64,000 nucleotides of DNA, from positions 1,984,001 through 2,048,000 of the forward strand of contig NW_025764892.1 of the NCBI RefSeq assembly GCF_003918875.1. The letters run 5' to 3'. The DNA is from Haliotis rubra. Its lineage: Eukaryota. The notes below the pieces were generated by a model that saw only the letters and a list, made by a program, of their open reading frames with translations, was not told the DNA's origin and did no database searches. Position 1 is the stretch's first letter. Every line of letters starts with the position of its first letter. Shown one piece after another: positions 13,782 through 35,800 of this stretch. A program made the position numbers and the translations under genes.

Positions 13782-13947
13782 CTGACTGACTGAGTATGGT
13801 TTTACGCCGCTTTTAGCAATATTCAAGCAATATCACGGCGGGGAACGCCAGAAATGGGCTTCACACATTGTACCCAGGTACGGAATCGAACTCGAATCTT
13901 CGGCGTAACGAGCGAACGCTTTAACCACTAGGCTACCCCACAGCTCC
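13782..13947 (-). mobile_element. tRNA-derived SINE family B, copy
   Basis: A-box/B-box head (gtagcctagtggttaaagcg ... gttcgattcc), (TCAG)n tail, 12-bp TSD cagtacagtaaa. Partial copies also at ~12997-13085 and ~15615-15723. Confidence 0.9.
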
Positions 13948-14563
13948 CAGTACAGTAAAACAACACCAAATCACACAATAATTATTCAGTGATGACATTT
14001 CACTCTTGTGTTGTGATTATAGGTATTTTTATCCATTCTGGCAGCTTGAAAAATGTTTCTTATTTTCTCTAAAGAGAAAACACAACTGTCTGACCCTTGC
14101 ACCGTTATCTGGAGACAAAAACTTCGGTTGTTTATGTTCACTAACGTCACCACTCCAGTGAGTTTTCCAGTGAGATATCAATAGTTCCCAGTTCCAATAA
14201 ATCTATATTTGTACTGTACTATCTAGAACAGGAGATGATCGTTAAACGAAGGGGAAAAGTGAATCCACAATGCCTCTTTCAGAATATGGTCAAATGTAAC
14301 ATGTTACATTTGGGATTACACTTTGACAGTAAAGTACATATTAGGCGTGGGGTGGGACGTACCCTCGCCCCTACCTACATCACCGGAATGTGAAAAAACG
14401 TACTTGAATATGTATTTTACTGAGAAAGTGTAAACTAAAATATAACAACTGCTACTTTAGACCACTTTCTGAAAAAGATTGTGTGGGATCCGTGATAGTT
14501 TACACTTGTCAGAGGGGTACACGAAATACGTGGCCTAAACTAGCAGTTGTCAGACTTGTAGAA

Positions 14564-14765: not shown

Positions 14766-16203
14766 TTTAAATCATCGCGAGACCTACCACTACCTGTAGC
14801 AGTAACTGTCGTAGCTGAAGCGTTTAGCCTGGACATTCAACAAACATGGACGAAAAGGTTCGTGATAAATCTCTACATAGAGCAGTTGCGTGATAACACT
14901 TGAGGCGTGTAAAGTTACATAATAAAGATATTACTCCTGTTCTTAAGTCCCATGTATCATTTAAATAAAATAACCCAGCATTAGACTCTGGAGAATATCC
15001 ATGAGTGAGACGGTGACAGTATATAGACAAGAGATTTAACAGTTAATGTCCTACCTGTTCGTCTGTCCGTTTTCGACTCGTGTGGTTCTAGACGTCGAAA
15101 GGCGACATACTATCATTAGTAACCAACAAAGGATCTTTTCAACTGTACGCTAGTTTTATGCTTTCCTTCTCAAGGAGACTTTCAATACATGCCAAAAACC
15201 GCTAAGCAGGAAGTTGCATGCACAGCTACTGATTACACGTTTTACAAGTTCTCCGAGAATGCATTCCACCCTGATGAGAACGTAGCCATACAAGGTATAT
15301 TCTAGCCAGTGTCAGGTTTCAAACTGGGTCGGGCAGGCATGCGTAACCAACATAAGAGGCCCAGAAACGTGCTGTAGATTCGCCTACAATTGCATGGCGA
15401 CCTGCTGCACGAATAGGCCAGGTCGACAGGAAAACAACAATCTCTTACCTAACCTCACCTTGAAGCATATACAATCATTTAATACTGAATAGATATGACC
15501 TATTTATGATGAGTTCGTTCTGGGTACTTAGGTTCCATACTGTATTTTGTGTAAAGGCAGTTAAACGTATTTTATATACATATATTTGTCTGGTCTGTCA
15601 TACATTGCGTGGTACGTTTGTACGCCACTTTTAGAAATATATTAAAGCAATATCACGGCGGGGGGCACCAGAAATGGGCTTCACACATTGTACCCATGTG
15701 GGGAATCGAACTCGGGTCTGCGGCCAATATCTAAGCCAATGCAAACCTAAACTACCACACTTTCAGAAAGAGGGAAGTCTGTGGGGTCCTTTTCATTATA
15801 TTCTATTATTATAATTTATGATTTAACCGGCGTTTTTTCTGTAACATTTGTTCATTTCAGAGACTAGATGTTAGTCTAGTATTTGTCATCAACTGTGATG
15901 AACATCTCGGTTAAATATTTGTAGAATACGTTTCTTTGTCTTTCAACATTATTCCGAATATATGACGGTGATCTGTAATAAACAACTCTGGACTAGACAA
16001 TCGAGTGATTGACGTCATGATTGTGGTTTTACGCCTAATTTAGCAATATTCCAGCAATATCACGGAATATCATATAGCAATATCATGACACCAAATAAAC
16101 AAAGAAAGTGACCGAGCCTGTTCCATCTTAAGAGGGGGTGATATAGAGCATACATTAGCAACTAAAGTACGTCCCACAACCAGTGTCAACACCCCAGGTT
16201 AGA

Positions 16204-16441
16204 CCCGTGAGGTTCCCGGGTTAGAACTGATCTTCAGTAACCCATGCTTGTCGTAACTAACTGGATAGGGTGGTCAGGTTGGCTGATTTGGTTGACACAT
16301 GTCTTTGCATACAAGTTGTGTAAATCGATGCTCGTGATGTTGATCACTGGATTTTCTGATCCAGACTCGATTATTTCCAGACCGCCGCCATACATCTTGC
16401 ATATTGCTGGGTGCGACGTTAAACAACAAACCAACCAACCA
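16204..16441 (+). mobile_element. Short retroposon family A, diverged copy
   Basis: Matches family A consensus; (AAC)-type tail. Another partial copy at ~17420-17622. Confidence 0.85.
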
Positions 16442-16446
16442 AATAC

Positions 16447-16563
16447 ACCAGGGCCTAGATTTTCGAAGCTCCCTTAGCGCTAAGATAGTCGTAAGTCTAT
16501 GTTAATGTATGGCACTTACGACTATCTTAGCGCTAAGAGAGCTTCGACAATCTAGGCCCTGGT
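16447..16563. mobile_element. Small palindromic MITE (Harbinger-like ends)
   Basis: accagggcctagattttcgaagctcccttagcgctaagatagtcgtaagt ... acttacgactatcttagcgctaagagagcttcgacaatctaggccctggt. Confidence 0.85.
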
Positions 16564-17825
16564 CATTTTCTATGCAGTACTGACGCTGATTTATCGTATA
16601 TCTTCAGCGCTAGTTTGTTACAAGTTACAAGCTGCTGTGATCCATGAGTACGAAAAAAAGGTGTTGATGGCTTGAACCAGGGATTGGTTGTAAATATTTG
16701 TACAATCAGGTGAAAGGCGTCATTGTAAAGATTGTGTGGCGTGTTTCAATTAATGTAAGCCCTACAACAATGTTGTCCTTACAAGGAAGTTATATCTGGA
16801 TCTAATAGAAATTCAACGTGCACGCTGATCCGTCGCAAAACATGGTTGATACCCTTACTATCTTCCAATTGTTCACCTATACATGTAAACTGTTTCTGAT
16901 TTAGTATGGGCGAGCTGTGAGAGTTTTTAAATAATAATAATCCTAAAGAAATCATCCATTTTGAAAGGCGGTGGATGTTCTGTCCTTTCCTGAAAAGTTT
17001 TCTACAACAGGATAGGCTCATAAACCATTGAAGTCAGCCACGGTGACACTAATAACAATTGTTCTGATCACGCTGTCGTCGACAGCAAACACCCGATACA
17101 TACCTATTGCATGTCTGTATGCCATCTCCATATCTACTCCTGACAAAAGGATCTAGTGTGACCGCGCTGAACTTCACGAGCATGCCTTTGAATAAGTGAG
17201 GTTTTTTTTAAACTTCGGATAGCAACATTAGCCAAAAACACACTCAGAAAACTATTGTCGTGGGTTCACGTATCCGATCCGATTATACTCAAGATAGACA
17301 TACACAATTATGATAACTAAAGTCACGTTAACTGTTGATTTTATCATGTCATCTGACGTAGTGTCTCCGAATACTTCCATTGTATCAGGAATTCCAGGTG
17401 GGTTAGCGGTCGGCAATCAATAACCCATGCTTGTCGTAAGAGATCCCGACTAACGGGGTCGGGTGGTCAAGCTTGCTGACTTGGATGACACATGTCATCG
17501 CATCCCAACTGCGTAGATAGATGCTCATGCTGTTGATCACTGGATTGTTTTGTCCAGACTCAGTTATTTACAGACCCCACCGTGGAATATTGCTGAGTGC
17601 GGCGTTAAACAACAAACAAACAATTACATGGTCCTTGATTTAACATGTCATTTCTTAAAATAAATATTACCCTTTAGAAAGGATAAACTTAACTATTGTA
17701 CAACAAAATAAAACTCTCTTTAAATATTCACTTCAATGGAATTACTGTGTGAGCTGTTTTTACGTCCCAAGGGTAACCGTCACGAAGAATCTAGAAGTCA
17801 CACCACGATCAGCTCATCGGGAACG

Positions 17826-18074
17826 TACCCGTGAAGATCCGGGTGAGAATTGATCTTCTGTAACCCATGCTTGTCGTAAGAGGCGAATAACGGGATCGGG
17901 TAGTCAGGCTCGCTGACTTGGTTGACACATGTCAACGGTTTCCAATTGCGTAGATTGATGCTCATGCTGTTGACAAATGGATTGTCTGGTCCAAACTCGA
18001 TTATTTACAGACCGCCGCCATAAAGCTGGAATATTGCTGAGTGCGGGGTAAAACTAAACTCACTCACTCACTCA
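17826..18074 (+). mobile_element. Short retroposon family A, full-length copy
   Basis: 13-bp TSD ctcatcgggaacg; (TCAC)n tail; begins at (t)acccgtgaagatcc. Confidence 0.92.
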
Positions 18075-18221
18075 CTCATCGGGAACGGGTAAGGGGCGCA
18101 ACCCTGCATAGCGAACTGCAGCGGCTTCGACAACAGACAGACAACATGCAACGCCATCTGTGTTCAGCACATGCGTTTTACAGTTTAATATATAAACACA
18201 TGCATACACGCACGCACACGT

Positions 18222-18533
18222 AAACGCAATGTTTCTTCAGCAACCCATGCTTGTCGTAAGAGTGGTCGGCGTCTGACGTCATCGGTGCGCAGTCTCGCTG
18301 ACTACAGCGGCTTGTAACGCTTGAAAGTGACATCCAGGTACATATTTACACTGACGGGATTTTAGCATTATATATACGAAGAACTTTCATTGTGGCCCCG
18401 TCAGTGACAATATATACTTAGAAGTCACTTTCAAGCGTTACAAGCCTCTGTGGTCAGCGAGACTGCGCACCGTTGACGTCAGACGCCGACCACTCTTACG
18501 ACAAGCATGGGTTGCTGAAGAAACATTGCGTTT
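18222..18533. mobile_element. ~310-bp palindrome whose outer arms contain family A retroposon sequence
   Basis: aaacgcaatgtttcttcagcaacccatgcttgtcgtaagagtggtcggcgtctgacgtc... is mirrored at the right end. The remaining family A body follows at ~18560-18690. Confidence 0.9.
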
Positions 18534-19199
18534 TCTTTACAAGCCTCTCTGTCGCTTTGACATCTGGCATCAAAACTGCGTAGTTCGATGCTCACGATTC
18601 CAGCTACTGGATCGTCTGGTCCAGACGCGATTGTTTACAGACTGCCGCCATACAATTGGAATATTACCCAGTGCGGCGTTAAAAAAACCAAAACATGATA
18701 GGTGAGGACAGGTTGTTACTTGAACAACGCCATTACTGAGGTCAAGGCCAGTATACCTGTCACAGTGACATATAGATGTATGTTGCCCAACCAAACACAT
18801 CGCTGTACAGGTGGTTTACGGTCACCGGAGTTTAATAACTGCTTTGTTAAAGCCCTACCTTGAGAAAACCAAACAAGACAGTCATACGATACGTAGTTAT
18901 GTACGCAGAGTGTCACAGGTCAAATAGTCCACCTGCATTCATACGGTTACTTAACGCAATTTGTCCTCGGGTATGTTGACTTAACAATTCCAAAACAACG
19001 CATCCAACCCAAAAATACAAAAAATATAACTTTGAAAATAATATTAACAAATTCAAATTTCAAATTGGGCAAATTTTAGTTACTACTACTAACCCGAAGA
19101 TATACGCTATACAGTAAACTACACTTACGAATGCCGTCATTGTCAGTTTGTTATAGACCTAATTTACTGTCATGAGCTATAAATGTCATTGAAATGTCA

Positions 19200-20620
19200 C
19201 ATTAACTAAATAGCCACTGTTATTCAGGTGTACATGGCTATTATCTATGCATTGTGTGTGGGTGCATGTTAGTATGCCGTCAAGCATGGTTCATGGTATC
19301 TTCTTGAAATGGTATCTATGCAGTTGCGTGGGAAGTGGTATCTTAGCGCTCAAGAATGTAAATCCATACACAGGTGCAGGTCTTTACATGATGCTTAAGG
19401 TGTTCTTTGTAAAAAATAGTTTGTGGGATTTAGAAGTATCCTGTCTTGTACTTTTTCGCATGTTAGAATGACAATGGCAATATGAAATACATTACCATGT
19501 TGGTACATGTACATGGTAAATCCCTGATTATCCAGTATATTGGATCTACACTGTGTTACATGTGCACTAAATAATATAACTGGTATGTGATACACTGAAT
19601 GTATCCCTTCAGGTCGATGTAACCATGTATTCCCTCGTCTGACCTCATACATTGGTCTCTGTGTAATCCATTCTCCCTCAGAACGGGCACCGTTTCCATA
19701 ACGGATTCTTACAAAATATAACATATGAAAACCATGACCATACCGTATCAATGCTTGTGTTGTAACCATGTGATATACGTGGCAGGACTCTATACCTGCA
19801 TGTTATACAAAACAGGCGACAGAATGATATCGTGTCGGATCCTTTCAGTGTTTTTGCATGACTGAGTTCTGAAATCCAATATGGTCCTTGCAGTGGTACA
19901 GCATTTCTACTTCATTTCTTAATAGTAAACAATACCGGGGAAGAGCCTGTTAGGTGACTTCCAAAACACCCCCACTGCCCAACTCAGAATTGTACGGCAG
20001 AGAAAACAACATTTTGCGAGTTATAAGATGCGAATAATATCACGGTTTATGATGTGGTGTTATAATTGTCGGAGAGAACAGTCTGGAATATGTTGCATCA
20101 TTATTACAAAATTAGTCTATTTTAATTTTAATGTTGTTTTTATTATTTGTTTCAAAATCAATCGCATATATGTTGGTGTCGGTGGTGTACTGTCATGCAC
20201 ATACTTAGTTATTATTGATCTAATTAATCAATCAATCAAGCTGACGCTTGGCTCGGACCAGACCAGTTTTTTCCAGTCACATCATGTTGTACTCGGATTA
20301 TCAGAATAGACTTTATGATCTATTCAAATCTAACAATTACTTCTTTACACATATTAGTCATAAGCAATGTCTCCACACCGGCTCGCGTTACTTGTACATG
20401 TTATTACTTGAAATGGACACCATCCCGGGGACTGTAGCTCACATTACAAAGGAACACTGACACGCAGACACTGGATATGAAGCCCTGTTGTTCTGCAATA
20501 ACTTTGATAGTTAATCCCTGCCTACCAACTGTGGCCTTGGATTGTGCCCCATGCTGGAGTTACCTTTGAACAATCTACAACGTACAATACAATTGTCAAC
20601 ATACAGAGGTCTGCCATGTT
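19200..20620 (-). pseudogene. Possible decayed gene for a secreted Cys-rich protein
   Basis: Manual minus-strand translation gives a signal-peptide-like start MADLCMLTIVLYVVDCSKVTPAWG, then a stop, and fragments such as GPYWISELSHAKTLKGSDTISFCRLFCITC. Many stops and frameshifts; no family confidently recognised. Confidence 0.25.
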
Positions 20621-21106
20621 ATTTCTGGCGCTGGTGCGCGTGCGCACGTGCTCCGTTCTACAAAGCGATTTTAGAGCTGCTATTATACTAACATCCAGTC
20701 TCTACTGTCATGCAATCAAACACTGTCTGTATTATGGGCCTATTTCCTCTTTACTGAATACACTGTCTGTCTGTTTGACATCTAGTCTCTGAAATGAACA
20801 TATTTTACAGAAAAAACCCACAATCTTCAAAAACTTTATAGGCTAATGATCTCAGAGAACGCCTTCATATTCAGAAACTGCGGCAATCTATACCTGAATG
20901 GTCTGTATTGGGTATTGTTCCAGGGTCTCTATGACAGACTGTGCTACCACAGTCAAAAGCAAATGCTAACGTAATGTATGGGAGTTACGAATCTTAGCAC
21001 AGCCTCCACAACTATATTTTATGTGTAGCGTTCAGCTAGAGTTGGTAAATAAAAAGCTAAAATAGGTTTGTGTAGCTTAATGTTTTATAATTTTCTTTGT
21101 TACAGA

Positions 21107-21353
21107 GTGAGTGAGTAAGTTTAGTTTTATGCCGCACTCAGCAATATTCCAGCTATGTGGCGGCGGTCTGTAAATAATCGAATCTGGACCAGACAATTCA
21201 GTTATCAACAGCATGAGCATCGATCTGCGTAACTGGGAACCGATGACATGTGTCAACCAAGCCAGCGGGCCTGACTACCTGATCCCGTTAGTCGCCTCTT
21301 ACGACAAGCATGGGTTACTGAAGGGTCATTCTAACCCGGACCTTCACGGGTCC
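21107..21353 (-). mobile_element. Short retroposon family A, full-length copy
   Basis: TSD ctttgttacaga/ctttggtacaga; 5' end ggacccgtgaaggtcc. Confidence 0.9.
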
Positions 21354-21828
21354 CTTTGGTACAGAAGAGGCGTAAGTACTTATTACTAATTAAGGTAAAA
21401 CTACGGGATATTTAGTATTCTACAATAACATATATGTGTACTTACAAATGAGACTGAGAATGTTTTTCTCTCTTATAAAACGATAAATGTGGCCAGTAAC
21501 TACAATCAATTATGTGCATATGGATGTATTATAACTGTAATATTGCATCACTTTCGAAGTTGAATCTTTCCAGTTATTTATCTATAAAAGCCGAAGTGAA
21601 TAAAAATAATATGAACTTTCTAAATCAATTTTCTTGTTGTGGTTGTTGAATCTGTAAATCAGAAAATGAGTTTCCAAATATTGGAAAGAAGAATAAGTGA
21701 AAAGTATTGTCACAGATACAAATCTAACTTAAGACAGTCATATCAAGAAGTAAAGAACTTAATGTCGCTTTCTAAACCACATTGCCTACGTAGATCATGA
21801 TTAAGATTTAGTCTCTGAAATGAACATA

Positions 21829-23365
21829 TACTAAGCAGCAAAAGAAACGTCAGTTTGGAATTTTCCTTCGCAGAAACGGATAACTGTAAACTCATTTAAT
21901 GTTTTGATTGTATATTTTTGGCAACATCTCCAACTTTACCTGAGCAAAGACATTCCTTCCCAAACTCAGAATTAAACCCAGGAAATGGTCTCAAAAACGC
22001 AACCTGATCTCGGACATGGTACGGTGTTCTCCATTTTCTTCATGCAACTCATGCTGCACGTGCTGTTCACAAGGACCAGTCCTACAAAATGCACCCCCAA
22101 ACCTGGTTGAAACATTCACATTACAACGTCAGCAGGATGCCGCGACTCAGGACAGCTCAAAGGAACCAGGCGCTATAGGAAGATTTGAAGCTGGCCACAC
22201 TGCACAAGCCGTTGCCAATCACTTCCAGGGCAACGTTCGGACCATCTCCAGGCTGCAGCAACGTTTCCGGGCCACCAACACCACAAATGATCGCCCCCGT
22301 GCTGGCAGACCAAGAGTGACCACAAGACGACAAGACCGCCATGTTGTGCGACAGCATGTACAGAATCCTTTCATGCAGGCATCCGAAAGAGCACGCCAGA
22401 CAGTGGGAACACACGGAAGACCAATCAGTACTGATACAGTACGCCGACGTCTTAACAGCGGGAACCTCCATTACCGTAGACCTTACCGTGGACCTATCCT
22501 CACCCCTCGTCATCGGCATGAACGTCTACAGTTTGCCCTACAACACCAAAACAGGCGATACAGGCAATGGAGAACTGTTCTGTTCACAGATGAGAGTCGG
22601 TACTGCGTATCAACTGCAGATGGCAGAACAAGAATATGGCGACGACGTGGCCAGCGTTACGCAGACCAATGTGTTATGGAAAGAGACTCATGGGGAGGTG
22701 CAAGCATCATGGTATGGGGTGGAATAGGCCTGAACCAGAGAGTGGGTCCTGTGGTGTTTCAGAACCTTGGTCCAGGGAGAGGAGGCGGCATCACAACGGT
22801 GCACTACATCGACCAAGCTCTCAGACCCCACGTCATACCACATTTCGCACGTCACAGGAACAACATTTTCCAGCATGATAACGCCCGGGCCCATACTGCC
22901 AGAGCTACACGGGACTTCCTACAGCAGAACGGTGTCAACATTATGCAGTGGCCAGCCCTTAGTCCTGATTTAAACCCAATTGAACATCTTTGGGATGAAA
23001 TTCAGAGGAGACTGAATAATGTCTTACCAAGGCCGAACACAGCCGATTTATTGCGCCAGGCCTTTCTCAGAGTGTGGTTCCAGGTGCCAATGGCCTTCAT
23101 CAATCGATTGGTGCACTCCATGCATAGACGCTGTGCTGCAGTTATTGCCGCTCATGGTGGTCACACTAGATACTGAAGTCAAGGGTCTGAATGGACTGCA
23201 AACGTTCGCGTAATGTCTTGAAATTGTGCTGAGTTATTCATTGTGTCAAGATATTGTACACAAAAAATGTTTTTGATCCGCTTATTATGTCCATTTCTGT
23301 AATGATTTGATAACAGTGCCTATCTAAATTCGAATTCGTACTGACCTTTTTTTCGCTGCTGAGTA
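21829..23365 (+). mobile_element. Tc1 (DD34E) DNA transposon, full length
   Basis: TA|tactaagcagcaaaagaaacgtcagt versus reverse complement of right end TA|tactcagcagcgaaaaaaaggtcagt. ~1.5 kb; contains the transposase ORF. Confidence 0.93.
22016..23176 (+). CDS. Tc1-family transposase (DD34E); the native start at 22137 appears frameshifted
   Basis: GRPR linker, FTDES, WGGI, FQHDNA-34 aa-E in WPALSPDLNPIEHLW, and C-terminal GGHTRY. ATG 22137 reads MPRLRTAQRNQAL* and needs a 2-nt correction to join IGRFEAG. Confidence 0.93.
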   Translation: MVRCSPFSSCNSCCTCCSQGPVLQNAPPNLVETFTLQRQQDAATQDSSKEPGAIGRFEAGHTAQAVANHFQGNVRTISRLQQRFRATNTTNDRPRAGRPRVTTRRQDRHVVRQHVQNPFMQASERARQTVGTHGRPISTDTVRRRLNSGNLHYRRPYRGPILTPRHRHERLQFALQHQNRRYRQWRTVLFTDESRYCVSTADGRTRIWRRRGQRYADQCVMERDSWGGASIMVWGGIGLNQRVGPVVFQNLGPGRGGGITTVHYIDQALRPHVIPHFARHRNNIFQHDNARAHTARATRDFLQQNGVNIMQWPALSPDLNPIEHLWDEIQRRLNNVLPRPNTADLLRQAFLRVWFQVPMAFINRLVHSMHRRCAAVIAAHGGHTRY

Positions 23366-24211
23366 TATTTTACATACCAAAATGTTCTCAAATTATATAA
23401 AATAAATTTAAAGAAGTCAAGAGACCTTCTATTTTTCAGAGACTGAATCTGAGACTCCAGTTTCTAAACGTGCCAATTATTATGGACAACAAGGGCTGTA
23501 AATATTTGTTTTCAGAGTATGTATGAGAGAGTAACGAAGTCCAAGAGGGTATCGATATGGACGTCCCACTACCAGCACAAGCTAACAACATGCACTTTAT
23601 TAAAAGTAAACGAATCACATCACTGTACTTGTATAATACGATTTAAATGATGACATAACTCATTTGGTGATATTTATTGACGAAACTTATAAAGCTGTAC
23701 ATACTCTTAACATCCGAAATGCCACAACGTTTACCGTTCTTGCTCACGTGTTTGACACGTACCTACTTTGGTTATCTGAATGGTCTGGCAACCTTCATGA
23801 ATCCACGATCCGCAGGAATGAAACATCTACTTTGAGTGTCCGGTTTCATTGTCATTAACAAACAGTTTCTGCCACTTTAACACTCTGACAAATATCGGTG
23901 ATGGTTGTGTGTCATCGCAGAGGATTGATTGCAGATTTTGGTCTTCATAAACTTCAACCCTCATGTCAGGAGTAATACATCACGGTTGTTAACACGACAC
24001 TTCTTGTTTCACCAATATATTTTTGTACTCTTCAACAAACACCTCTTTACCACTGAATGTACGAGCAAACCATATCTTAAGGAAATTAATAAAAACTAAA
24101 GGAATCTACATTCTCTGAAAATAGGTGTGGCTGTACAAACCAGAGAGCACGCAGTGTCCGGTATCTTCCAACACACACGTGTCTTCACATGGGTAGGGGC
24201 AGTTATCTCCC

Positions 24212-24634
24212 CTAATCTGTCTCTTGGCGTACAGAGACCACCACATCCTGGCCAAGCGCGTCGATGACGGTAACAAAGGGAAACTCTCCTTCATCGAATC
24301 TCATCTTGATGTCTTTTCCTAAGTCCCCATCCGGTAGTTTAAGGTCGTCTCTGACATTACCTTTGTTGTCAGCGATGGATATGAACCCCCCGTCCAGGAT
24401 ATCCACCAGCTGAAACTCCTGACCCGGCAGAGTTTTCATAATATGTTTTAACGGGAGGGTGTCTTCGTAGCTGGTATGAGTGATAACGTCAGAACCAACT
24501 AGACGCACCTTGCCTTTCTCGGTCTTGGGAGCTGAACATTCCATAATCTTGCAGGGACGACCTTTCAGGACAACGTGATCGTTCACCTTCACGGAAGAAC
24601 ACTGCTTCATATCCGAAGAACCAAAATCCGCCAT
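24212..24634 (-). CDS. Divergent eIF5A-like protein lacking the canonical hypusine motif
   Basis: QCSSVKVNDHVVLKGRPCKI, KVRLVG.D, YED, FQLVDI.DGGFIS, GNVRDDLKLPDGDLGKDI and VTVIDALG align to eIF5A over its whole length. STSKTGKHGHAK is replaced by SAPKTEK---GK. Single coding exon. Confidence 0.9.
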   Translation of the reverse strand: MADFGSSDMKQCSSVKVNDHVVLKGRPCKIMECSAPKTEKGKVRLVGSDVITHTSYEDTLPLKHIMKTLPGQEFQLVDILDGGFISIADNKGNVRDDLKLPDGDLGKDIKMRFDEGEFPFVTVIDALGQDVVVSVRQETD

Positions 24635-25852
24635 ACTTTTTTTTTTCTAAACGCTGATGATTCACCCTGCAAAACAAGCCGGCGTCTGGGAGAGAGAATG
24701 GCTGTACAAGATCTGCGTCTCGGGTTATACGAGGCAATATGATAACTCGCTGTGACGTTTATATCGTCTTGTCGACAGTGCGTGACAAAGACTAACAGAT
24801 TCTATCTGTCTGTGGTCAATATCTGACAATTAACCCGCGGGATTTACCCAGTCGTGCAGTCTTAACGGCAGGCTTTTCGCCTTGGCATGATAGCAGGAAC
24901 AATGACAAAGGTGCAAAACACGTTTCAATGGGTATAATGCCTATTCGCCAGTCAAGTCCGATATAAACATGTCCACACGCTAATATAATTTAGCACTCAA
25001 CCAATAATATATTATTATGTTTATATTATAATGCATGGTCATAAGAACACAATAATCAGGGCGGACCCAGAGGGGTGCGGGATCCCCACCCGAAAAATAT
25101 TCCCTGAGGTGACATTTTCCCTTAACCTTTAGAGGTCATGATATATGTATACATACAAGCCCAAAAACCACAATATATGAATAGTTCGACAGATTCTTCA
25201 ATTCTGACATTTTTCTTGTGCAGATTAAACTTTTATATTTGTACATATTTGGCCATTTAAAATAGAATTCATTTCTATAAAGACGACGTTCTGTTTCAAA
25301 GGCTGTACATCTAAATAAATAGTGTATTTCATCTGCAATGGCTGGAGAATCGCACAGAGGACAGGTTCTGTCCTCACGGGATAGGCCACGCCATCTGCCT
25401 GTTTCTACTGGAAGATCGTGGTTACTTAAATTGTTCCTAATTTCAAAAGCGGGAGATATAATGATTTTTGAGAAGTAAAAATTGTTCGAAAGACGGGATT
25501 TCTTTAATTAGTTTATAATTAATTCCTTTAGAACTATTACTAACGGAACTTCGCCAAAATTGAATGGAATGATCTCTTAAGGTGATTTCTACTTGTGATG
25601 AAACCCAGTTGGGAGAATAATTCTATGGATTTCTGAACACATCACTCAGTCGGCATCTATTCAATATATTCTCTACATTTTTAAGCAAAACATTTTCTTT
25701 ACCTTTTTTTGATTTTATCATACATCAAATAATCGAGGATTGTTTTCGATATCTTACTTTTATTACTGTTCAATGTGTTATGCCAAAACATGATAGTTCT
25801 CTTCGCTATTATAATGTTCATTGGTTATCTCCCTAGCTCGCCATATATAAAG

Positions 25853-26024
25853 ACTGACTGACTGACTGAGTTTGGTTTTACGCCGCTTTAAGCAATATTC
25901 CAGCAACATCACGGCGGGGGACACCAGAAATGGGCTTCACACATTGTGCCCATGTGGGGATTCGAACCCTGACCTTCGGCGTGACGAGCCAACGCTTTAA
26001 CCACTAGGCTACCCCACCGCCCCC
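25853..26024 (-). mobile_element. tRNA-derived SINE family B, full-length copy
   Basis: TSD ccatatataaag; A/B boxes; (TCAG)n tail. Confidence 0.92.
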
Positions 26025-26225
26025 CCATATATAAAGAAGTTTGCTGTAGAGTACGATGACATGTCTCCATGAAGTTCCAATTGTTTCCATAGAGACCAAA
26101 ATAGTTATTATGATATAAAAATATCTATCCAAGTATGACTTTTCAAGAGCTAGGGCTTGTAAACGTATAAATATGTAAATATTAACCAATGTGGTAGAAT
26201 CCTAGCGTTTTCATATTTTACCTAA

Positions 26226-26468
26226 CCCATGAAGATCCGGGTTAGAATTGGTCTTTGGTAACCCATGCTTGTCGTAAGAAGCGACTAACGGGATCGGGTG
26301 GTCACAGGCTCGCTGACTTGGTTGACACATTGTCATCGTATCCAAATTGCGTAGATCGGTGCCCACGCCGTTGGTCTCTGGATTTTCTGGTGCAGACTCG
26401 ATTATTTACACACCGCCGCCATATAGCTGTAATATTGCTGATTGCGGCGTAAAACTAAACTCACTCAA
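26226..26468 (+). mobile_element. Short retroposon family A, copy
   Basis: Matches the family consensus from cccatgaagatcc to aaactcactca. Confidence 0.88.
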
Positions 26469-26892
26469 TCTTATTTTACCTGTACATACCAGAGAGACAG
26501 ACAGGGCATATTTTTCATCACCAGAGAACTGGTCTGTATACCCACGGAGATCCGTACTTTGCATATTTTGTCAGACTCGTACCCAGATGTGTCCTTACCT
26601 ATTAAATTGGATGTCTCGTATTTTCACTCAACATATTTCTTTTGCATACTGATCTTTCTTTGAGTTACCTTCCGCAATTAGTTGATATTCCTTGATTTGA
26701 AACTTTTCAAAGCTGCCTTAAATTCAGCTCACTCCCTTGCTCATAAATAGCGTCAGCACATACGGCGAGCGTCAAAATATATTAGCGGTATATATCTAAC
26801 AGTAACAGTGTTGAGAGTGGCCTCCCTTGGAACTTGACTCGAAACGTGGAAAGTGTAATATTTTAATAGGATTGTTTCCTAATTTGCTTATA

Positions 26893-29800
26893 ATGGCTGG
26901 TGCAACAAGACATCTTTATAAGTTTATTGGTAATTAGAGATTAAACAGATACAATTCTCACTGAAGTAGTGACATGCAGTACACGTGTAGCATAATAAAG
27001 CACACAACACTGTGTACACATGTTCATGAGGTTACTCAGTACATGAAAAATCCCCGACAAGGTTTGTGCCAGCCGACCTGAAAATGACAAACCAAGCTCC
27101 CTACTCAGCTGCTACGTGACCGAATGGGTGTCTTTAAACACTATTTTATGACATGGTATGAATGTATCAATTAGGCAGTATGCACGGTAACATATCAGTT
27201 TGGGGAAACCTACCGATCGGCCTATAATAGGCCAAACGGGATATTATAGGCTGTTCTGCCTATTCAGCCTATAATTATGATATTTATCAAATAAATTTGA
27301 AGTAGTGCATTTCCGCATGAAGATATTTACATCATTCAAGTTTTGATGTCCTAAGGTTTTTATTCAAACCCTTTTTGAGAATTTTCATCACATAATAAAG
27401 GAGTTTGGAAATTGATAATTAAAGATAAGTCTATAATACTGAAAATTAATGACATAGATATTCAGTTTCAGTTTTCAAAAGGAGAATGTATGCAAAATTG
27501 TGTTCTTAATGAAACATCTTTTCCTGAACATGCTATAAATTTCCATTTTGACCAGAAACTTATTTTTTTCAAGCTGAGGAGGTCCATTAACAATTCATCT
27601 CTATTATCATATAAAACCATTTTGTGCGGAAATTGATAGCTTGTGAAATAATTAGAAAAATGTTCAAATATAGCCCGATCGGCCTATAGCAAAATAGGCA
27701 GAACAGCCTATAATATCCTGTTTGGCCTATTATGGGCTGATCGGTAGGTTGCCCCAACCTGATTATAGGTATTGTCTGATACACTGCTTTTGGACGTCAG
27801 TGCTTACTCTCAGTAATATGATAGGGGTTGTCAAACATACATTATAAATACTTAGATGATGGCATATGTGCTGGAGAGCATAAATAAGTTACTCACATGT
27901 TTTAACCCCTCAACACGAAGATATTTATTGAACAATTGGACCCCTATCAGTATTTTGGGAATACAAATCTAGACTAAACATTTGTGAATGTCACAACTGC
28001 TCTAAAGGTGCTAAAGTACTGTCGGAAATGCTAGAAAAATGCTTTTTAGCCTTAATACTTTGATAAAGGTGATAAATGTACTATGTTGTCAATATATCAA
28101 CTCGCCTATAGTGTACCTAATTTTTATTTCAATCGATTTAACATTCCCATGCATTTAAAGGGCAGTTTACGGGAGAGAATATGGTACCAAAACAACAACT
28201 TAAGATTTTTTCAGAGTTCAGCAACAGAAATCTGAAATAGTCTTTACATTTACCGGTATGCTAATAATACAGGTGGTATAAAAATATGAATCAACGTTTT
28301 TCTTTAACAAATAAATGTTGAATATTTGTGTTACTTTACTTAATTATCGTTTCTTTATTGAAGAAATATTAATATAAATGTTAAGTCTTGATAAATAAGT
28401 TTCCCGTCATGCATGCACATCTTTATCACAGCGTCCATTATGGCCAACTATTTGCAGTCAATTGTTGCAAAGGTTTATAAGTTTATTGTGCTTGAAAAAG
28501 ACAGAGGTAAACCTTTCATTAGTTTAGAAAGGGTTTATTACAGAACTTGTAGAGCTGTTGGTATGTCTTACCAACAAGTTTACAATATTGTAAACAAATC
28601 AGACAAGACAGGGACGGTCTCAAAAGCAAAACCGGGACATAAAACCATCCTTGACAACTTTGACAAGGGAGTACTTAGACGGGCGGTCTACAAACTTTAT
28701 GAGGAGAAGAATATATATATTCTAAAGAAGCTACACCAGTGACTTCGTTAAATCTTTGGCCAATGTTCACAACTAGAATAAATTGACTGAATTACATCCA
28801 TATTTTTGCAATGAAATATACTGTTGACATGCAAAACATTTATTAAAACGTTGCACATTTCTACAATCAATTGATAAGATAACACAAGTGATAGGAATCT
28901 CTCCAATGTACAGTAATTCGTATGTTTATTTCAAAACAAACACACATACACACATACACAAATGATCCCTTACATAACCAATACGTATACTATACGTACA
29001 CATATTCAACATTTTGAAGAAAACATCTATTGAGATGACCCCTTCCCCGAGCGTGTGCTCAGGTGTCAATTTCACCTGTCGATACCGTGCATGCTGATGA
29101 CGTAACACAGGCAGTTAATGTTTGTATCAAATAACGTCCCACTACCCGTTATTTTTCTAAGTTTTTGGTATTTTCATCAGTAAAAACACATTTTAGGGCA
29201 TGTCTCAAAATTTATTCCCTCGGTCTTCATTAGGTAGATGTTTCTTAAAGTGATATTTGTTATTTATGTAACTGTAATACCTCTGAATTTTAAATATAAG
29301 TCAAAAAGCATTTTTCTAGCATTTCCGACAGTACTTTAGTGTGTTTGGTTGCCACAGCATATTGAACCTAATAAGATAACCTCTCTGTCACATCACGATA
29401 TTGCTAGTGTGGCTTTATACAATAACAAATGGATTGTTTACAAAATATTGTACTATTTTCGTTTTATATTTATATGTCTATGTCCGAAACTCTTTGGTAT
29501 TGAATTCATGTGCAGCTGTTCATTTATTTTTGTTTTCATTCTGGACATCTAGATATTGGAGCCAACTTGACAGGTAATTCTTAGTTTAGACCATAATTAT
29601 TTAACATATATATTTATATTCTTAAAACTGGTTCTTGGATTCATGTGAAACCTTCAATAATTTCTTATTATTTATGTTCTTGCCATCTATTAACTGTTTT
29701 CATACACCAATAAGTTTGTAAATTAAGTGAAATTCTCTCAGCCTCTTCTCTTGTTTCAAGAATAACTTGTATTCACAATGTATATTATTTAGATCCAGTA

Positions 29801-32800
29801 TTCAGAGGAGTTTACCATGGGTCCAAGAAGCATGAAGGTAAGTAATTTAAAGGACTCTAACATATAACACTGTAATCTCTAAAGCAGCTGATACGATTTG
29901 CTCTAAAGAATTATCATCGTTTCAAATTTGTCTTTGAAAGCCTATCCAGTAGCAGATTCATTAACTTATTAAAAGGTGTAAAAGCCACTCACATCCTCAC
30001 ACTGCTTGGTTGCAATTAAAAATTGCTATCTCATTTGGTGCAGATGACTTCAAGGATGTACTGCAGAGGGCCTTCGATGGTGGCTTGCAGAAGGTAACCT
30101 TTGTGATGTGATACATATTATCTCCAAAAATATACAAGGGTGTTTTAATATCTCAGTATGCTTGCAGCTACATTTCACTTAATTGTGCAAAAGAATACAA
30201 CATGAGAGAAAGAAGGGGCTGAGTTTTATGGAGTACAATCCTATTAGATTTTCCTGAATTTCTCTTTTGAATTGATTTCTCTTTTGAGTTGCACGTGAAG
30301 AGTAAATGCATCAGACGGCTTGATTCAGTGATGAAGTACACTGTGGACCATCACTAATACTTTATAAGTTTGTATACATTACCTGTGAATATATATCAGT
30401 CTATGAAATAAGCCAAAAACCCAGCCAGACATCAGGGCTGGTATCTTCAAAATGTTACCAGTCCAAAATGGATTTAACCAGACCAGACACCAAGATATGG
30501 CTCTTGATATAACATCTAAGTTTTTACCAGCCCATCGGGCTGGCTAGCTGTAAAGCTAGACTCTCCGTCTGAAATCTAACCAGTCTTGGTTGGTCGAACG
30601 GGCCTTATTTCATTCAGTTTTGACCAATGAAGGACATAGCTTGGTTCAAGGTGATGGTCACTGGCCAATGCTAAGCCACTCATCATTCTAATTACCATTA
30701 CATCTCACAAACAGAAATATTTCAACATGTGCCAAATACTTATAACAGGCAGTTGTGGGGTTCTCAAAAAGGAATGCATGGATTAGGGCTCATTTGTCCT
30801 CCATGAGTAATGAATGGGCTCATTTCAGCAGCTGACTTATAAGTCACAAATGTCAGCACTACATAAAGTTGTATTTAGGTAGGGTTGATGGAGGAACATA
30901 GTGTTTACAACCTCTGCTATGTATTGATGAGTGTATCTTGTACTGGTCCAGACTTACTTACACCCCCGTAGCCACAATGTTACTGACTGCAGAGTGAATC
31001 AACGTTCTTGCTCTCATTTCCAGATCATGATCACAGGTGGCTCTCTGAAGGATGCAGCTGAAGCCCTAGAGCTGGCCAAGACAAATGGTGTGTGTATTTG
31101 GATAATGTGGTAGACCCATGGACTTTAACGGGCCATGTCCTGTAGGTTGAGACAGTTGCAGGCCATGCCCTGTAGGTTGAGACAGTTACAGACCATGTCC
31201 TGTAGGTTGAGACAGTTACAGGCCATGTCCTGTAGGTTGAGACAGTTACAGGCCATGTGCTGTAGGTTGAGACAGTTACAGGCCATGCCCTGTAGATTGA
31301 GACAGTTACAGACCATGTCCTGTAGGTTGAGACAGTTACAGGCCATGTGTTACAGGCCATGTCCTGTAGGTTGAGACAGTTACAGGCCATGCCCTGTAGG
31401 TTGAGACAGTTACAGACCATGTCCTGTAGGTTGAGACAGTTACAGGCCATGTCCTGTAGGTTGAGACAGTTACAGGCCATGTCCTGTAGGTTGTTACAGG
31501 CCATGTCCTGAGACAGTTACAGGCCATGCCCTGTAGGTTGAGACAGTTACAGACCATGTCCTGTAGGTTGAGACAGTTACAGGCCATGTCCTGGAGGTTG
31601 AGACAGCCATAGGCCATGCCCTGTAGGTTGAGACAGTTACAGACCATGTCCTGTTACAGGCCATATCCAGTTGAGACAGTTACAGGCCATGTCCTGGAGG
31701 TTGAGACAGTTACAGGCCATGTCCTGTAGGTTGAGACTACAGGCCATGTCCTGTAGGTTGAGCCACAGTTACAGGCCATGTCCTGTAGGTTGAGCCATGT
31801 CCTGTAGGTTGTTACAGGCCATGTCCTGTAACTGCCTCTGTCGGTTGAGACAGTTACAGGCCATGTCCTGTAGGTTGAGACAGTTACAGGCCATGTCCTG
31901 TAGGTTGAGACAGTTACAGGCCATGTCCTGTAGGTTGAGACAGTTACAGGCCATGTCCTGTAGGTTGAGACAGTTACAGGCCATGTCCTGTAGGTTGAGA
32001 CAGTTACAGGCCATGTCCTGTAGGTTGAGACAGTTACAGGCCATGTCCTGTAGGTTGAGACAGTTACAGACCATGTCCTGTAGGTTGAGACAGTTACAGG
32101 CCATGTCCTGGAGGTTGAGACAGTTACAGGCCATGTCCTGTAGGTTGAGACAGTTACAGGCCATGTCCTGTAGGTTGAGACAGTTACAGGCCATGTCCTG
32201 TAGGTTGAGACAGTTACAGGCCATGTCCTGTAGGTTGAGACATTTACAGGCCATGTCCTGTAGGTTGAGACAGTTACAGGCCATGTCCTGTAGGTTGAGA
32301 CAGTTACAGGCCATGTCCTTGAGAGACAGAGACAGTTAGGTTGAGACAGTTACAGGCCATGACCTGTAGGTTGAGACAGTTACAGGCCATCACCTGTAGG
32401 TTGAGACAGTTACAGGCCATGTCCTGTAGGTTGAGACAGTTACAGGCCATGTCCTGTAGGTTGAGACAGTTACAGGCCATGTCCTGTAGGTTGAGACAGT
32501 TACAGGCCATGTGCTGTAAACACTTCTTCCATTTGTATACTGGCTTTGATCCCAAAATAGAGATAATCATGGACTCACAGTCGTGCATGAATTAGCTGTC
32601 TGTTTCTTGATTGGTGTGGAGGTGTTGGCTGCACTCTACTAGGTGTTAGTGTAAGATGCTGGTGTTAGTGTAAGATGCTGGTGTTTGTATTGCAGATAAC
32701 CTGTACAGCACAGTGGGGTGTCATCCAACTAGGTGTAAGGAGTTTGAGAAGAGTGGTGACCCCGACAAGTACCTTGCTGACCTCATGGAGATGATCTCAC

Positions 32801-35800
32801 AGAACAGGAACAAGGTGGTGGCAGTTGGGGAGTGTGGACTAGGTAGGAGACTTATCTAGTGACTATATAACCAACAACTACATCTACAAGGAGATTCATA
32901 GTCCTAAGATGACTGAGTCCTATCATGAGTACATTCATACTTGCCCATATGAAATTCATTGTGTGTAATGTAAACATTTCCTTAGAGCACTGGTAGTGGT
33001 TTCCAGTTATCATTATTTCTGGATTTGTTGAATGGACATGATTACACTTCTTTTATCAGAATAAGATAATTACAATTCTGAGATATATCTTTGTAGTGAG
33101 ATAGTTTTCACCTTTTTAAATAAGTGAGAAAAATATCCTGTTCCATAGAAATACCTTAAAACAAAGTTGTGTTTCAGTAATACATATCCATTATAGCTCT
33201 GTTTCTCTTTAACAGATTCCCAAGAGTGAGCCATGCTTTCCTGATATGGATTCATGAAGTAACATAATTATGCTTGTCTTGTTTTCAGATTTTGACAGAT
33301 TACAGTTTTGCCCCAGAGAGACACAGCTCAAGTGAGTAGATGTTATTACTGATATGTACCAGTAACTAAATATGAAAATAATTTCTGAATGTTGTAAACA
33401 AAAAGACTATCATGTTCTGAGGGTACAAGCATTTAGAATCTGACCACTATTTTCAGGTATTTTGAGAAGCAGTTTGACATCACTGAAGCAATCCATTTGC
33501 CAATGTTTCTGCACTGTCGCAACTCAAGCACAGAATTCCTAGACATCATCAGCAGAAATAGGGACAGGTTCAAAGGGGGAGTGGTAAGGTTGCTCGTCTT
33601 GCTGGTACTGGCTCAATGGCCAACATGTCTTACATTAGTTCTGAATTGTGTAGAAATTGTATAAAAGTTTTCAACAAGATTTGAAAAGTTCAGCTGATAA
33701 TTTATCAAACTTCTTCAGCCATGAAAATCTGTTAATGACACATGAACAACTGTATTAAGTACTTATACTTCTCGGGTCACTACCTTTCTCTGTCAGAGGG
33801 ACCCGTGAAGGTCTGGGTTAGAATGAACCTTCAGTAACCCATGCTTGTCGTAAGAAGCGACTAACGGGATCGGGTGGTCAGGCTCGCTGACTTGGTTGAC
33901 ACATGTCATCGGTTCCCAATTGCACAGATCGATGCTCATGCTGTTGATCGCTGGATTGTCTGGTCCAGACTCAATTATTTAGAGACTGCCGCCATATAGC
34001 AGGAATATTGCTGAGTGAAACTAAACTCACACACTCACTATCAGAGAGATTTATTGTGTTTGACATGTACACGTCTGTCTGTTAGTGTCTTTTCCTGCTT
34101 ACAGTCAGAAGATATGGCAAAAAATTATTTAGTTGAAACAAGTCATAATTTCTTCTTCTTTGTTGAAACTCACAAGCTTGGTTTGGTACTGACAACCTTG
34201 TGTCATAACCAATGGTTTGAACCTGAGATGAGCTGATCCTGGCACAGCAGGGGGAAGTAACCCCTTGTCACAAGGGTTATGCAAAGTAGGACTCACTTGA
34301 TGTCTGATGTCATCAATGATGTTACTATAAATAGCAATGTGACCGTCTGCTTTTTGGATGACAGACATCTTTCCTACCATTGCAGGTGCACTCCTTCACA
34401 GGGACGAAGGAGGAGGTGGCTGCAATGCTGGACCAGGGCCTGTATATAGGAATCAATGGCTGGTGAGGCTTTGCTAGACTAACTGGTAGTCCCAGTAGTT
34501 ACTTTGTATCCCAGCACCAGAAGTGAACTAGTTTTCTTGTGGAAGATAACAGACTGGATCCTAAGGGAAGACTAGACTTTCTGCATTTAGATATTTTGCT
34601 TTGCAAAACCGTTTGGGCAGAAAGGAAAATAATGTGATTGAGGGGACTGTGAGACAGATTATAGGCTATCATCCTTTTGCCATTGAATTCGCCTGAGTTT
34701 GTTTGTATATTAAAATTAGATACATGCTATTCATATCTTTTGCCAAAACTAAAAAATCAGTTTTTGAGCATGTTGACAGACATTCAATCATCTGCTTTTA
34801 TCTACTTGTACTGCAATGATGAAACTAGCATGCACATTAAGGTAAAAAGAAAAGAAAAGAATTTCGAGACATCATTTTTGGCCATGTATGTTACATTTAC
34901 TGTGGATGAGACCTTAACATATGACAGATGTTTAGTTCTTGCCTAACACACAACTTTTCATCTCAGCTCTTTGAAAACACAAGAAAACATTGAAGCAATG
35001 TGTACCGTCCCAACAGAGCGCCTGATGATAGAAACAGGTAAATCATGGATAGAAGCAGTAAATACAGGGATGAGAATGAAGTTTTAAGAAAAACTCTGAA
35101 AACTAGCGGAAGCTCCTGATATTTACTCATTTTAGACCTTTAAAACTGGCTCAGAAATGACAATATGAACACAGCAACCATTAAAAAACTTTAAATCTGC
35201 TGAAGCACATTCATACAATTGTCAACAGATTTAAATGATTCACAAAAATGACCCTTGGCCTTATGAAATTCCCGGAATTCCACGGATCCGCAGAAAATTC
35301 TCATCCCTGTAAATATATGTGCAGTAGCAGCTGAACTCATTAACCTGCAGAAAAATAACCTAGTGCAACCTTAGGTAGAAACCTTGTTGCATCAGATAAA
35401 AACAGGTTGCACCTGCTGCTCAATAGAAAATCTTGTATAAAATATGATGCTTGAGTTTTGGTAATGATAGTTTAGAACATTATAACAAAAGAAATCTGGG
35501 ACTGATAAGATTAGTTACCTTACTTTTTCTTAAAATTTCATGAACAGTAAGTCCTTCAGTCACTGCTCATACAGTCATCAGAGTCACTCTTCCAAGTCAG
35601 TTTCTCATCATCCTGTTTTCCAGCTGAAGTCTCAAAAATTGACTTGCATCTGGCGCAAGTTAGACTAATAACTAGGTGGCATTTTGTAATATTGGGTTGC
35701 ACCAGTGCAAGTAACAAAGCACTAAATAGAGCCCTGTAACCAGAAAGATTTCAACCTAGATAAGTGTAACTATTTCAATTTTTTGTAACAAAAAGTGAGA

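What the first reader, a model, noticed from the sequence alone, without database searches (positions are those of the whole stretch)
24212..24634. Intact eIF5A paralog with the hypusine loop dismantled
Seen: a full-length, stop-free eIF5A-like ORF diverged throughout. The motif STSKTGKHGHAK has become SAPKTEKGK: the Lys is kept, the preceding Gly is Glu, and three residues are deleted. The CDS has no intron, and a plausible 5'UTR acceptor (cttgttttgcag, 24667-24669) lies just upstream. Established: this loop is essentially invariant in eIF5A and is needed for deoxyhypusine synthase recognition; fungal HEX-1 is a precedent for a neofunctionalised eIF5A duplicate. Inference: a retained retrogene encoding a non-hypusinated eIF5A that could act as a ribosome E-site blocker or dormancy factor, a decoy, or a structural protein.
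Basis: partly seen in the sequence, partly recalled or inferred. Interest (0 to 1): 0.78.

Follow-up and report, generated by a model that had tools for sequence, protein, structure and literature searches.

The report
Abalone eIF5A copy without hypusine loop
Abalones carry an extra, intron-free copy of the translation factor eIF5A that selection has kept intact even though the short loop that must carry eIF5A's unique hypusine modification is cut down, so it is a real gene that probably works without the one feature thought indispensable to this protein family.

Summary
Window 24212-24634 (-) is an intact 140-aa ORF with both eIF5A Pfam domains. Its hypusine loop is three residues short: KTEK---GK against KTGKHGHAK.

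It is not a decaying pseudogene:
- Positional orthologues with the same three indels are intact in Haliotis rufescens (annotated only as 'eIF5A-1-like') and in a third abalone.
- Pairwise dN/dS is 0.22-0.28 (Fisher p about 3e-8).
- The 136 bp before the ATG is 91% identical between species, against 71% at third codon positions.
- RNA-like runs of two related organisms hold mRNA-shaped contigs of about 1 kb over the gene and nothing over its promoter.

The CDS has no intron, whereas the canonical Lottia eIF5A CDS has at least three. That fits retroposition.

The residual loop is the fastest-evolving part of the protein (omega about 2.4, against 0.17 elsewhere). The Gly52 position, whose G52A substitution alone blocks hypusination in human eIF5A, is not conserved. 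The N-terminal extension is also truncated, while the uL1-binding OB domain is well kept.

My best reading is a hypusine-independent eIF5A derivative. It may occupy the ribosomal E site or L1 stalk without stimulating catalysis; that function is inferred, not shown.

The proposed 5'UTR splice acceptor has no support either way. An exhaustive protein search found the paralogue only in Haliotis.

The parts
24212..24634 (-). Single-exon CDS of the eIF5A-like paralogue (140 aa plus stop)
   Evidence: ORF list and sequence; Pfam PF21485 and PF01287; AF2 model at pLDDT 79 with the eIF5A fold, TM about 0.7; omega 0.22 against H. rufescens
24509..24535 (-). Remnant of the hypusine (beta3-beta4) loop, residues 34-42 SAPKTEKGK. 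It is three residues shorter than canonical, the Lys is kept and Gly49 is Glu
   Evidence: Alignments. It is the least conserved segment between orthologues (45% identity), with 7 non-synonymous changes to 1 synonymous
24635..24986 (-). Conserved 5' block, taken to be the promoter plus 5'UTR. It holds an A10 run at 24637-24646 and a TATAAA at 24758-24763
   Evidence: 82% identity to H. rufescens overall and 91% over 24635-24770, against 71% at third codon positions. Identity falls to 37% beyond 24986
24667..24669 (-). It is unverified
   Evidence: The sequence is present. In H. rufescens the AG is shifted by one base. No joint is seen in the laid contigs, which do not reach this place
23596..24211 (-). 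3'UTR, with AATAAA signals at 23673-23678 and 23596-23601
   Evidence: The X1 and X2 contigs run from the start codon region to about 23615-23620. X6's contig runs on to 23371. The signals are read. Similarity to H. rufescens extends to about 23598

Best explanation
This is a functional, transcribed, abalone-lineage duplicate of eIF5A. It was most likely born by retroposition. It keeps the two-domain eIF5A fold but has lost a working hypusine loop.

Shown: the ORF is intact in three species at the same locus, it evolves under purifying selection, and it has a conserved 5' block.

Inferred from the shape of contigs in runs that are only guessed to be RNA: the gene is transcribed in two related organisms.

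Inferred from established enzymology: deoxyhypusine synthase cannot modify it. The loop that must thread into the enzyme's tunnel is three residues short, carries a Glu next to the Lys in the window species, and has no conserved Gly52 equivalent. The protein therefore cannot reach or stabilise the P-site tRNA CCA end as eIF5A does.

Inferred, and the weakest step: the best-kept part is the C-terminal OB domain, which in eIF5A inserts into the uL1 cleft. So the protein most likely still docks at the L1 stalk or E site, as a non-stimulating occupant that competes with eIF5A or E-site tRNA, or as a placeholder on idle ribosomes.

My separate odds: real constrained gene 0.93; not hypusinated 0.85; ribosome E-site or L1 occupant 0.35.
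For: - Both eIF5A domains and the eIF5A fold are present.
- The same three indels occur in H. rufescens XP_046326700.1 and in a third abalone contig, and all three ORFs are intact.
- The locus is collinear over about 15 kb.
- By the Nei-Gojobori method, dN is 0.112, dS 0.501 and omega 0.22, with Fisher p 2.7e-8. The other two pairs give omega 0.23 and 0.28.
- The 136 bp upstream of the ATG is 91% identical, against 71% at third codon positions.
- X1 and X2 each hold a 1.0-kb contig (depths 12.8 and 101.5) running from within +/-8 nt of the ATG to about 23615, with zero depth on the conserved promoter. X6 behaves likewise. The DNA-like run X3 spans both flanks.
- The canonical Lottia gene has at least 3 introns in its CDS.
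- G52A and K50R each prevent hypusine synthesis (PMC3494187, citing Cano 2008). The loop 46-SKTGKHGHA-54 enters the DHS tunnel, and the DHS surface there is negatively charged (PMC10042821).
- Domain II of eIF5A sits in the uL1 cleft (PMC4770232). The PDB holds a yeast 80S with non-modified eIF5A (5dc3) and several dormant ribosomes carrying eIF5A.
- The OB domain is 84% identical between orthologues, and the LKLPDGDLGK motif is kept from canonical eIF5A.
Against: - No run is on record as RNA. Transcription is inferred from contig shape and depth only, and neither strand, tissue nor 5' end is known.
- Two of the three ribosome-holding elements of eIF5A are degraded: the beta3-beta4 loop that contacts rRNA helices H74 and H93, and the N-terminal extension that sits between uL1 and eL42. 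The tRNA-contacting Arg27/Lys28 pair reads K-V. Ribosome affinity may therefore be low (PMC4770232).
- Only 31 of 71 columns that are near-invariant in a vertebrate-biased canonical set are kept.
- The linker is wholly different from canonical eIF5A yet conserved among the paralogues, which hints at a new geometry or a new partner.
- An omega of 0.22 is far more relaxed than expected for a core translation factor.
- The Lys and the K-T-x-K frame are kept in all three species, so some modification cannot be excluded.
Confidence: 0.5

Rival explanations
1. Non-ribosomal neofunctionalisation. The protein has left translation and uses its OB domain and its new conserved linker for another partner, such as RNA binding, a structural assembly or a signalling partner. 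The old loop is a vestige.
For: The loop and the N-terminal extension, both ribosome contacts, are the least constrained parts. The linker is 0% identical to canonical eIF5A but 83% identical between orthologues. A long stem branch of 0.77 substitutions per site precedes a slow crown. HEX-1 shows that the fold can be reused.
Against: There is no targeting signal, and the C-terminus (ETD or EAE) is not a PTS1. Similarity to HEX-1 (E 1e-6) is far weaker than to eIF5A (E 1e-32). The canonical uL1-facing motif LKLPDGDLGK is retained.
Confidence: 0.3
2. Still a working, hypusinated eIF5A isoform, perhaps specific to a tissue or stage, with an unusual loop.
For: The Lys and the K-T-x-K frame are conserved in all three orthologues. 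The rest of the N-domain beta-sheet that binds DHS is recognisable.
Against: The loop is three residues short, and no Gly52 equivalent is conserved (D in two species). G52A alone abolishes modification (PMC3494187). Glu sits next to the Lys in the window species. Of the 208 eIF5A-like proteins held from the two searches and screened for the loop motif, 135 matched the K-[TS]-G-K-H-G-[HS]-A-K pattern used in the screen. The loop is the fastest-evolving segment.
Confidence: 0.08
3. A transcribed processed pseudogene, or a gene on its way to decay, with no protein function.
For: It is intronless and very divergent from canonical eIF5A, has lost the family's key motif, and its omega is higher than expected for a core factor.
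Against: Three intact ORFs persist across dS 0.5, and the only CDS indel between orthologues is in frame. Omega is 0.22 with p 3e-8, and 0.17 outside the loop. The 5' block is more conserved than silent sites.
Confidence: 0.05
4. A decoy or regulator of the hypusination enzymes: it binds DHPS or DOHH without being modified.
For: The N-domain sheet that provides most of the DHS interface is present (PMC10042821).
Against: Unlocking the DHS active site requires the loop to enter the tunnel (PMC10042821), and the loop is truncated and variable between species. A Glu beside the Lys faces an acidic DHS surface.
Confidence: 0.05

Closest known systems
Canonical eukaryotic eIF5A (EIF5A1/2, Tif51A/B)
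   Same: The same two Pfam domains and the same fold; 45-50% identity; the Lys equivalent to Lys50 and the C-domain motif LKLPDGDLGK are kept.
   Different: The beta3-beta4 loop is three residues shorter and lacks a conserved H-G-H. The N-terminal extension is truncated, the linker is rewritten, and there are no introns. Omega is about 0.2. The paralogue is known only from Haliotis.
Human EIF5AL1
   Same: An extra eIF5A family member reported as not hypusinated, and with effects that differ from EIF5A1 (PMC10093921).
   Different: EIF5AL1 differs from EIF5A1 at only three residues and its loop is intact. It is unstable and evolutionarily young. The abalone gene is about 50% diverged, has its loop cut, and is conserved across a dS of 0.5.
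Fungal HEX-1 (Woronin body major protein)
   Same: An eIF5A-derived duplicate that lost hypusination and gained a new role. The fold matches at TM about 0.62.
   Different: Sequence similarity is only E 1e-6, against 1e-32 to eIF5A. The abalone protein has no PTS1 at its C-terminus, and it is an animal protein rather than one from Pezizomycotina. There is no evidence of self-assembly.
Bacterial EfpL/YeiP, a paralogue of EF-P
   Same: A paralogue of the homologous factor, described as having its own role in translating proline-containing sequences (abstract of 10.1101/2024.04.15.589488, listed).
   Different: It is bacterial, arose independently, and is still an active translation factor. Nothing comparable has been shown for the abalone protein.

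Membership tests
eIF5A family (Pfam PF21485 + PF01287) | N-terminal SH3-like barrel plus C-terminal OB fold | tested here: met
   53.7 and 66.3 bits, both above the curated cut-offs. The AF2 model matches eIF5A structures at TM about 0.7.
eIF5A family (functional eIF5A) | Conserved hypusine loop S-K-T-G-K-H-G-H-A-K of full length | tested here: not met
   The loop is three residues short in all three abalone orthologues, Gly49 is Glu in the window species, and the post-Lys residues vary (GK or DM).
eIF5A family (functional eIF5A) | Lys modified to hypusine by DHPS and DOHH | not testable with these tools
   This needs mass spectrometry or a spermidine-labelling assay. The literature predicts loss (PMC3494187; PMC10042821).
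eIF5A family (functional eIF5A) | [quoted passage not shown] | not testable with these tools
   Only indirect evidence is available: domain II is conserved, while the loop and the N-terminal extension are degraded (PMC4770232).
Processed retrogene | Intronless CDS while the parental gene type has introns | tested here: met
   The CDS is a single exon in the window, in L001 and in L002. The canonical Lottia eIF5A CDS is split after about aa 58, 93 and 137. The abalone parental gene itself was not examined.
Processed retrogene | Poly(A) remnant and target-site duplications | tested here: inconclusive
   No A-tract follows the 3'UTR. At this age such marks are expected to have eroded.
Processed pseudogene | Disabling mutations or neutral evolution (omega about 1) | tested here: not met
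   There are no stops or frameshifts in three species, and omega is 0.22-0.28 with p 3e-8.
HEX-1 / Woronin body protein | C-terminal PTS1 and closer kinship to HEX-1 than to eIF5A | tested here: not met
   The C-terminus reads ...RQETD. HEX-1 scores E 1e-6, against eIF5A at 3e-32.

The most novel reading that the evidence does not exclude
Abalones have evolved a natural 'hypusine-dead' eIF5A. It still docks at the L1 stalk or E site, and acts as a regulated antagonist of eIF5A or a placeholder on idle ribosomes, for example in gametes, larvae or under stress. It would be one instance of a recurrent and so far undescribed pattern, in which eIF5A duplicates shed the hypusine loop independently in animals and fungi (spider mite, Mucor, Cerrena, several metagenome singletons).
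Probability: 0.25. Interest if true: 0.75.

Novelty: new variant of a known kind. Interest (0 to 1): 0.55.

Why it matters
The hypusine loop is among the most invariant motifs in eukaryotic proteins, and the whole spermidine-DHPS-DOHH pathway exists to modify this one lysine. An animal paralogue kept by selection with that loop cut down gives a natural experiment on what the eIF5A scaffold can do without hypusine. That question is currently approached only with K50 mutants and enzyme inhibitors. If the protein does bind ribosomes, it would be a genetically encoded antagonist or placeholder for the E site. If it does not, it would be a second case, after fungal HEX-1 and the first in an animal, of the fold being recruited to a new job. 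The gene model exists in RefSeq only as 'eIF5A-1-like'. I found no paper that describes it.

Tried and rejected
- Processed pseudogene: rejected on the intact orthologues and omega.
- HEX-1 membership: rejected on weak similarity and the absence of a PTS1.
- The 1,940-nt Logan contig L002 was fetched in the hope that it was a transcript showing the 5' end. It is collinear genomic DNA, 94.5% identical to H. rufescens with the promoter included. It gave a third orthologue but no splice information.
- Dating the duplication: both trees are star-like. The abalone clade sits on a 0.77 stem, and its only partner (83/66) is a divergent amphioxus sequence, probably long-branch attraction. Identity to molluscan canonical eIF5A (41-48%) is no higher than to fish.
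- The 5'UTR acceptor: the RNA-like contigs end inside the A10 run at 24628-24642, so they neither show nor exclude a joint at 24667.
- Cano et al. 2008 (PMC2536608) is not held, so I cite its result through PMC3494187.
- A search of the scan's own notes for eIF5A or hypusine found nothing.
- The abalone canonical eIF5A gene was not recovered. Babylonia's protein had no locus on record.
- Translating window 26700-27100 in the three + strand frames gave no open frame for the TatD neighbour.

Full report
**1. What is there.** Window 24212-24634 on the - strand is an ATG-initiated ORF of 140 codons with no internal stop. Both halves match the eIF5A family above Pfam's curated cut-offs: IF5A-like_N at 53.7 bits and the eIF-5a OB fold at 66.3 bits. 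Against solved structures the best matches are zebrafish and human eIF5A (E 3e-32 to 1e-30). Fungal HEX-1 reaches only about 1e-6. An AlphaFold2 model (mean pLDDT 79) has the eIF5A two-domain fold, with TM about 0.7 to human and yeast eIF5A and about 0.62 to HEX-1. Only one eIF5A-like sequence lies in the window.

**2. The loop.** HMMER and MAFFT both place a 3-residue gap directly after the Lys that aligns with hypusine Lys50. The gap can be slid within the loop, so Gly41 could be aligned with Gly52, but the loop is three residues short either way. The protein also has three further changes:
- a 2-residue deletion in the inter-domain linker;
- a 1-residue insertion at the start of the OB domain;
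- an N-terminal extension shorter by about 10 residues.

**3. Orthologues and synteny.** A word search found one close relative, H. rufescens XP_046326700.1 (145 aa, 76-79% identity), named only 'eIF5A-1-like'. It carries the same three indels, and its loop reads K-T-G-K-D-M. Its gene is a single exon. Its 20-kb locus is collinear with window 15000-30000, including the 5' end of a divergently oriented TatD-family gene. A second member of its 90% cluster lies on a 1,940-nt Logan contig. That contig proved to be genomic DNA of a third abalone, 94.5% identical to H. rufescens, and its ORF is also intact.

An exhaustive phmmer search of 1.84 billion representatives found nothing else above 46% identity. 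A second word search, started from the H. rufescens protein, found canonical eIF5As of Lottia, a scallop and Babylonia but no further paralogue. As far as these collections show, the gene is confined to Haliotis.

**4. Selection.** Nei-Gojobori estimates for window against H. rufescens are dN 0.112, dS 0.501 and omega 0.22. There are 34 synonymous changes on 93 sites and 34 non-synonymous changes on 327 sites (Fisher p 2.7e-8). The other two pairs give omega 0.23 and 0.28. The only CDS indel between orthologues is an in-frame 15-nt one.

Constraint is uneven along the protein:

| Segment (window residues) | Identity between orthologues | Other measure |
|---|---|---|
| 34-44 (loop remnant) | 45% | over residues 33-44: 7 non-synonymous to 1 synonymous changes, omega about 2.4 |
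| Beta1-beta2 core | 88% | - |
| OB domain | 84% | - |
| Linker | 83% | 0% identity to canonical eIF5A |
| All outside residues 33-44 | - | omega 0.17 |

Non-synonymous change is enriched in the loop (Fisher p 0.014), although the counts are tiny. So the old loop is unconstrained or diversifying, while the rest is conserved, including a linker that is new relative to canonical eIF5A.

**5. Regulatory flanks.** Upstream of the ATG, 352 bp is 82% identical to H. rufescens. The proximal 136 bp is 91% identical, higher than the CDS (84%) and far above third codon positions (71%). Beyond 24986, identity drops to 37%. The block holds a TATAAA at 24758-24763 and an A10 run abutting the start codon, both conserved. 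Downstream there are AATAAA signals at 23673-23678 and 23596-23601.

**6. Transcription.** No public run that holds the stretch is on record as RNA, so this evidence is indirect. When the contigs were laid on the window:
- X1 and X2 (organism A, about 7% diverged in the CDS; about 70 Mb of contigs in about 250,000 records, a transcriptome-like profile) each hold one contig of about 1.0 kb. It runs from 24628 or 24642 to about 23615-23620, at depths of 12.8 and 101.5.
- Neither X1 nor X2 holds anything over the conserved promoter block. Given that block's conservation, it would have been laid had it been present.
- X6 (organism B, about 3% diverged, 47 Mb) holds a contig from 24586 to 23371 at depth 174, and nothing upstream.
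- X3, from the same study as X6 (1.08 Gb, contigs up to 79 kb), spans both flanks, as genomic DNA should.

I read this as transcription in two related organisms from two studies. Strand, tissue and 5' end remain unknown.

**7. Origin.** The canonical Lottia eIF5A gene spans 1.7 kb for a 157-aa product. Its CDS is split after about residues 58, 93 and 137. The abalone paralogue has none of these introns in any of the three species, which fits retroposition. No poly(A) remnant is visible, as would be expected at this age. Trees are star-like, and the abalone clade (support 100) sits on a stem of 0.77 substitutions per site, so the date of the duplication is unresolved.

**8. What the changes mean.**
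- The cryo-EM structure of human eIF5A-DHS shows the loop 46-SKTGKHGHA-54 threading through a tunnel into the active site and displacing the enzyme's 'ball' motif. The DHS surface there is negatively charged (PMC10042821).
- K50R and G52A each prevent hypusine synthesis (PMC3494187, citing Cano et al. 2008).
- The abalone loop is three residues short, has no conserved Gly52 equivalent, and in the window species has a Glu beside the Lys. It is therefore very unlikely to be a DHPS substrate. This is an inference from established enzymology, not a measurement.

On the ribosome, eIF5A is held by three elements (PMC4770232):
- the beta3-beta4 loop, which contacts rRNA helices H74 and H93;
- the N-terminal extension, which sits between uL1 and eL42;
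- domain II, which sits in the uL1 cleft. In addition, Arg27 touches the P-site tRNA.

In the paralogue the first two are truncated, and the Arg27/Lys28 pair reads K-V. Domain II and its LKLPDGDLGK motif are the best-kept canonical features. The PDB holds a yeast 80S with non-modified eIF5A (5dc3) and several dormant ribosomes carrying eIF5A. Occupancy without hypusine is therefore physically possible.

**9. Verdict on mechanism.** I put 0.93 on a real, constrained gene and 0.85 on no hypusination.

For function, my leading reading (about 0.35) is a non-stimulating occupant of the L1 stalk or E site. The close rival (about 0.30) is a non-ribosomal role built on the OB domain and the rewritten linker. 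A still-hypusinated isoform, a decaying pseudogene and a DHPS decoy are each below 0.1.

**10. Comparison with known cases.** The closest family is eIF5A itself. The fold criteria are met, but the defining loop criterion is tested and not met. The protein should therefore be called an eIF5A-derived paralogue, not an eIF5A.

Precedents for non-hypusinated relatives are fungal HEX-1 and human EIF5AL1, which is reported as not hypusinated although its loop is intact (PMC10093921). Among the 208 eIF5A-like proteins held from the two searches I screened, 73 did not match the canonical loop pattern. These include clearly shortened loops in a spider mite, in Mucor and in Cerrena, and in several metagenome singletons, all in clusters of one or two members. 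None groups robustly with the abalone clade. Loss of the loop in eIF5A duplicates may therefore be recurrent. I found no paper describing that pattern or the abalone gene.

**11. Limits.**
- The near-invariant column set used is biased towards vertebrates.
- The dN/dS values come from a counting method on three sequences.
- The expression evidence rests on contigs, not reads.
- The abalone parental gene was not recovered.
- The window holds 175 N letters. They were not touched.

Noticed in passing
Proteins P0083, P0108-P0110, P0117, P0159, P0162, P0166 and others: Many eIF5A-like proteins in public data have shortened or degenerate hypusine loops. Named ones come from the spider mite Panonychus citri (two loci), Mucor bainieri and Cerrena zonata, and one is filed under Streptomyces vinaceus (probably contamination). 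All sit in clusters of 1-2 members and carry uninformative names.
   Followed up: partly
window 24637-24646 (-): An A10 run lies directly before the start codon and is conserved in H. rufescens and the third abalone. The RNA-like contigs all break in or near it.
   Followed up: partly
window 25850-26030; also 13783-13949, 45656-45838, 48709-48865, 52205-52372, 61833-61964: A very high-copy repeat of about 170 bp (summed contig depth 1e5-1e7 in the laid runs). The loose-end consensus next to it contains a tRNA T-arm-like GGGGAATCGAACCC, suggesting a tRNA-derived SINE. It is also present in the H. rufescens locus.
   Followed up: no
window 13157-13348, 17867-18054, 21124-21311, 26265-26455, 33841-34017, 36007-36194, 59290-59477, 62503-62677: A second dispersed repeat family of about 190 bp, 78-86% identical to copies in the H. 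rufescens locus.
   Followed up: no
window 16473-16544; L001:12813-13620: A unit of about 53 bp that occurs once or twice in the window is expanded into a tandem array of about 15 copies at the syntenic place in H. rufescens.
   Followed up: no
window 26771-27009: A block 79% identical to the 5' end of a TatD-DNase-family gene that lies head-to-head with the eIF5A paralogue in H. rufescens, about 2.5 kb away. The three + strand frames of window 26700-27100 gave no open frame there.
   Followed up: partly
L003 (Lottia gigantea KB203534.1): Lottia has two 157-aa canonical eIF5A genes side by side in divergent orientation, about 82% identical over the first exon.
   Followed up: no
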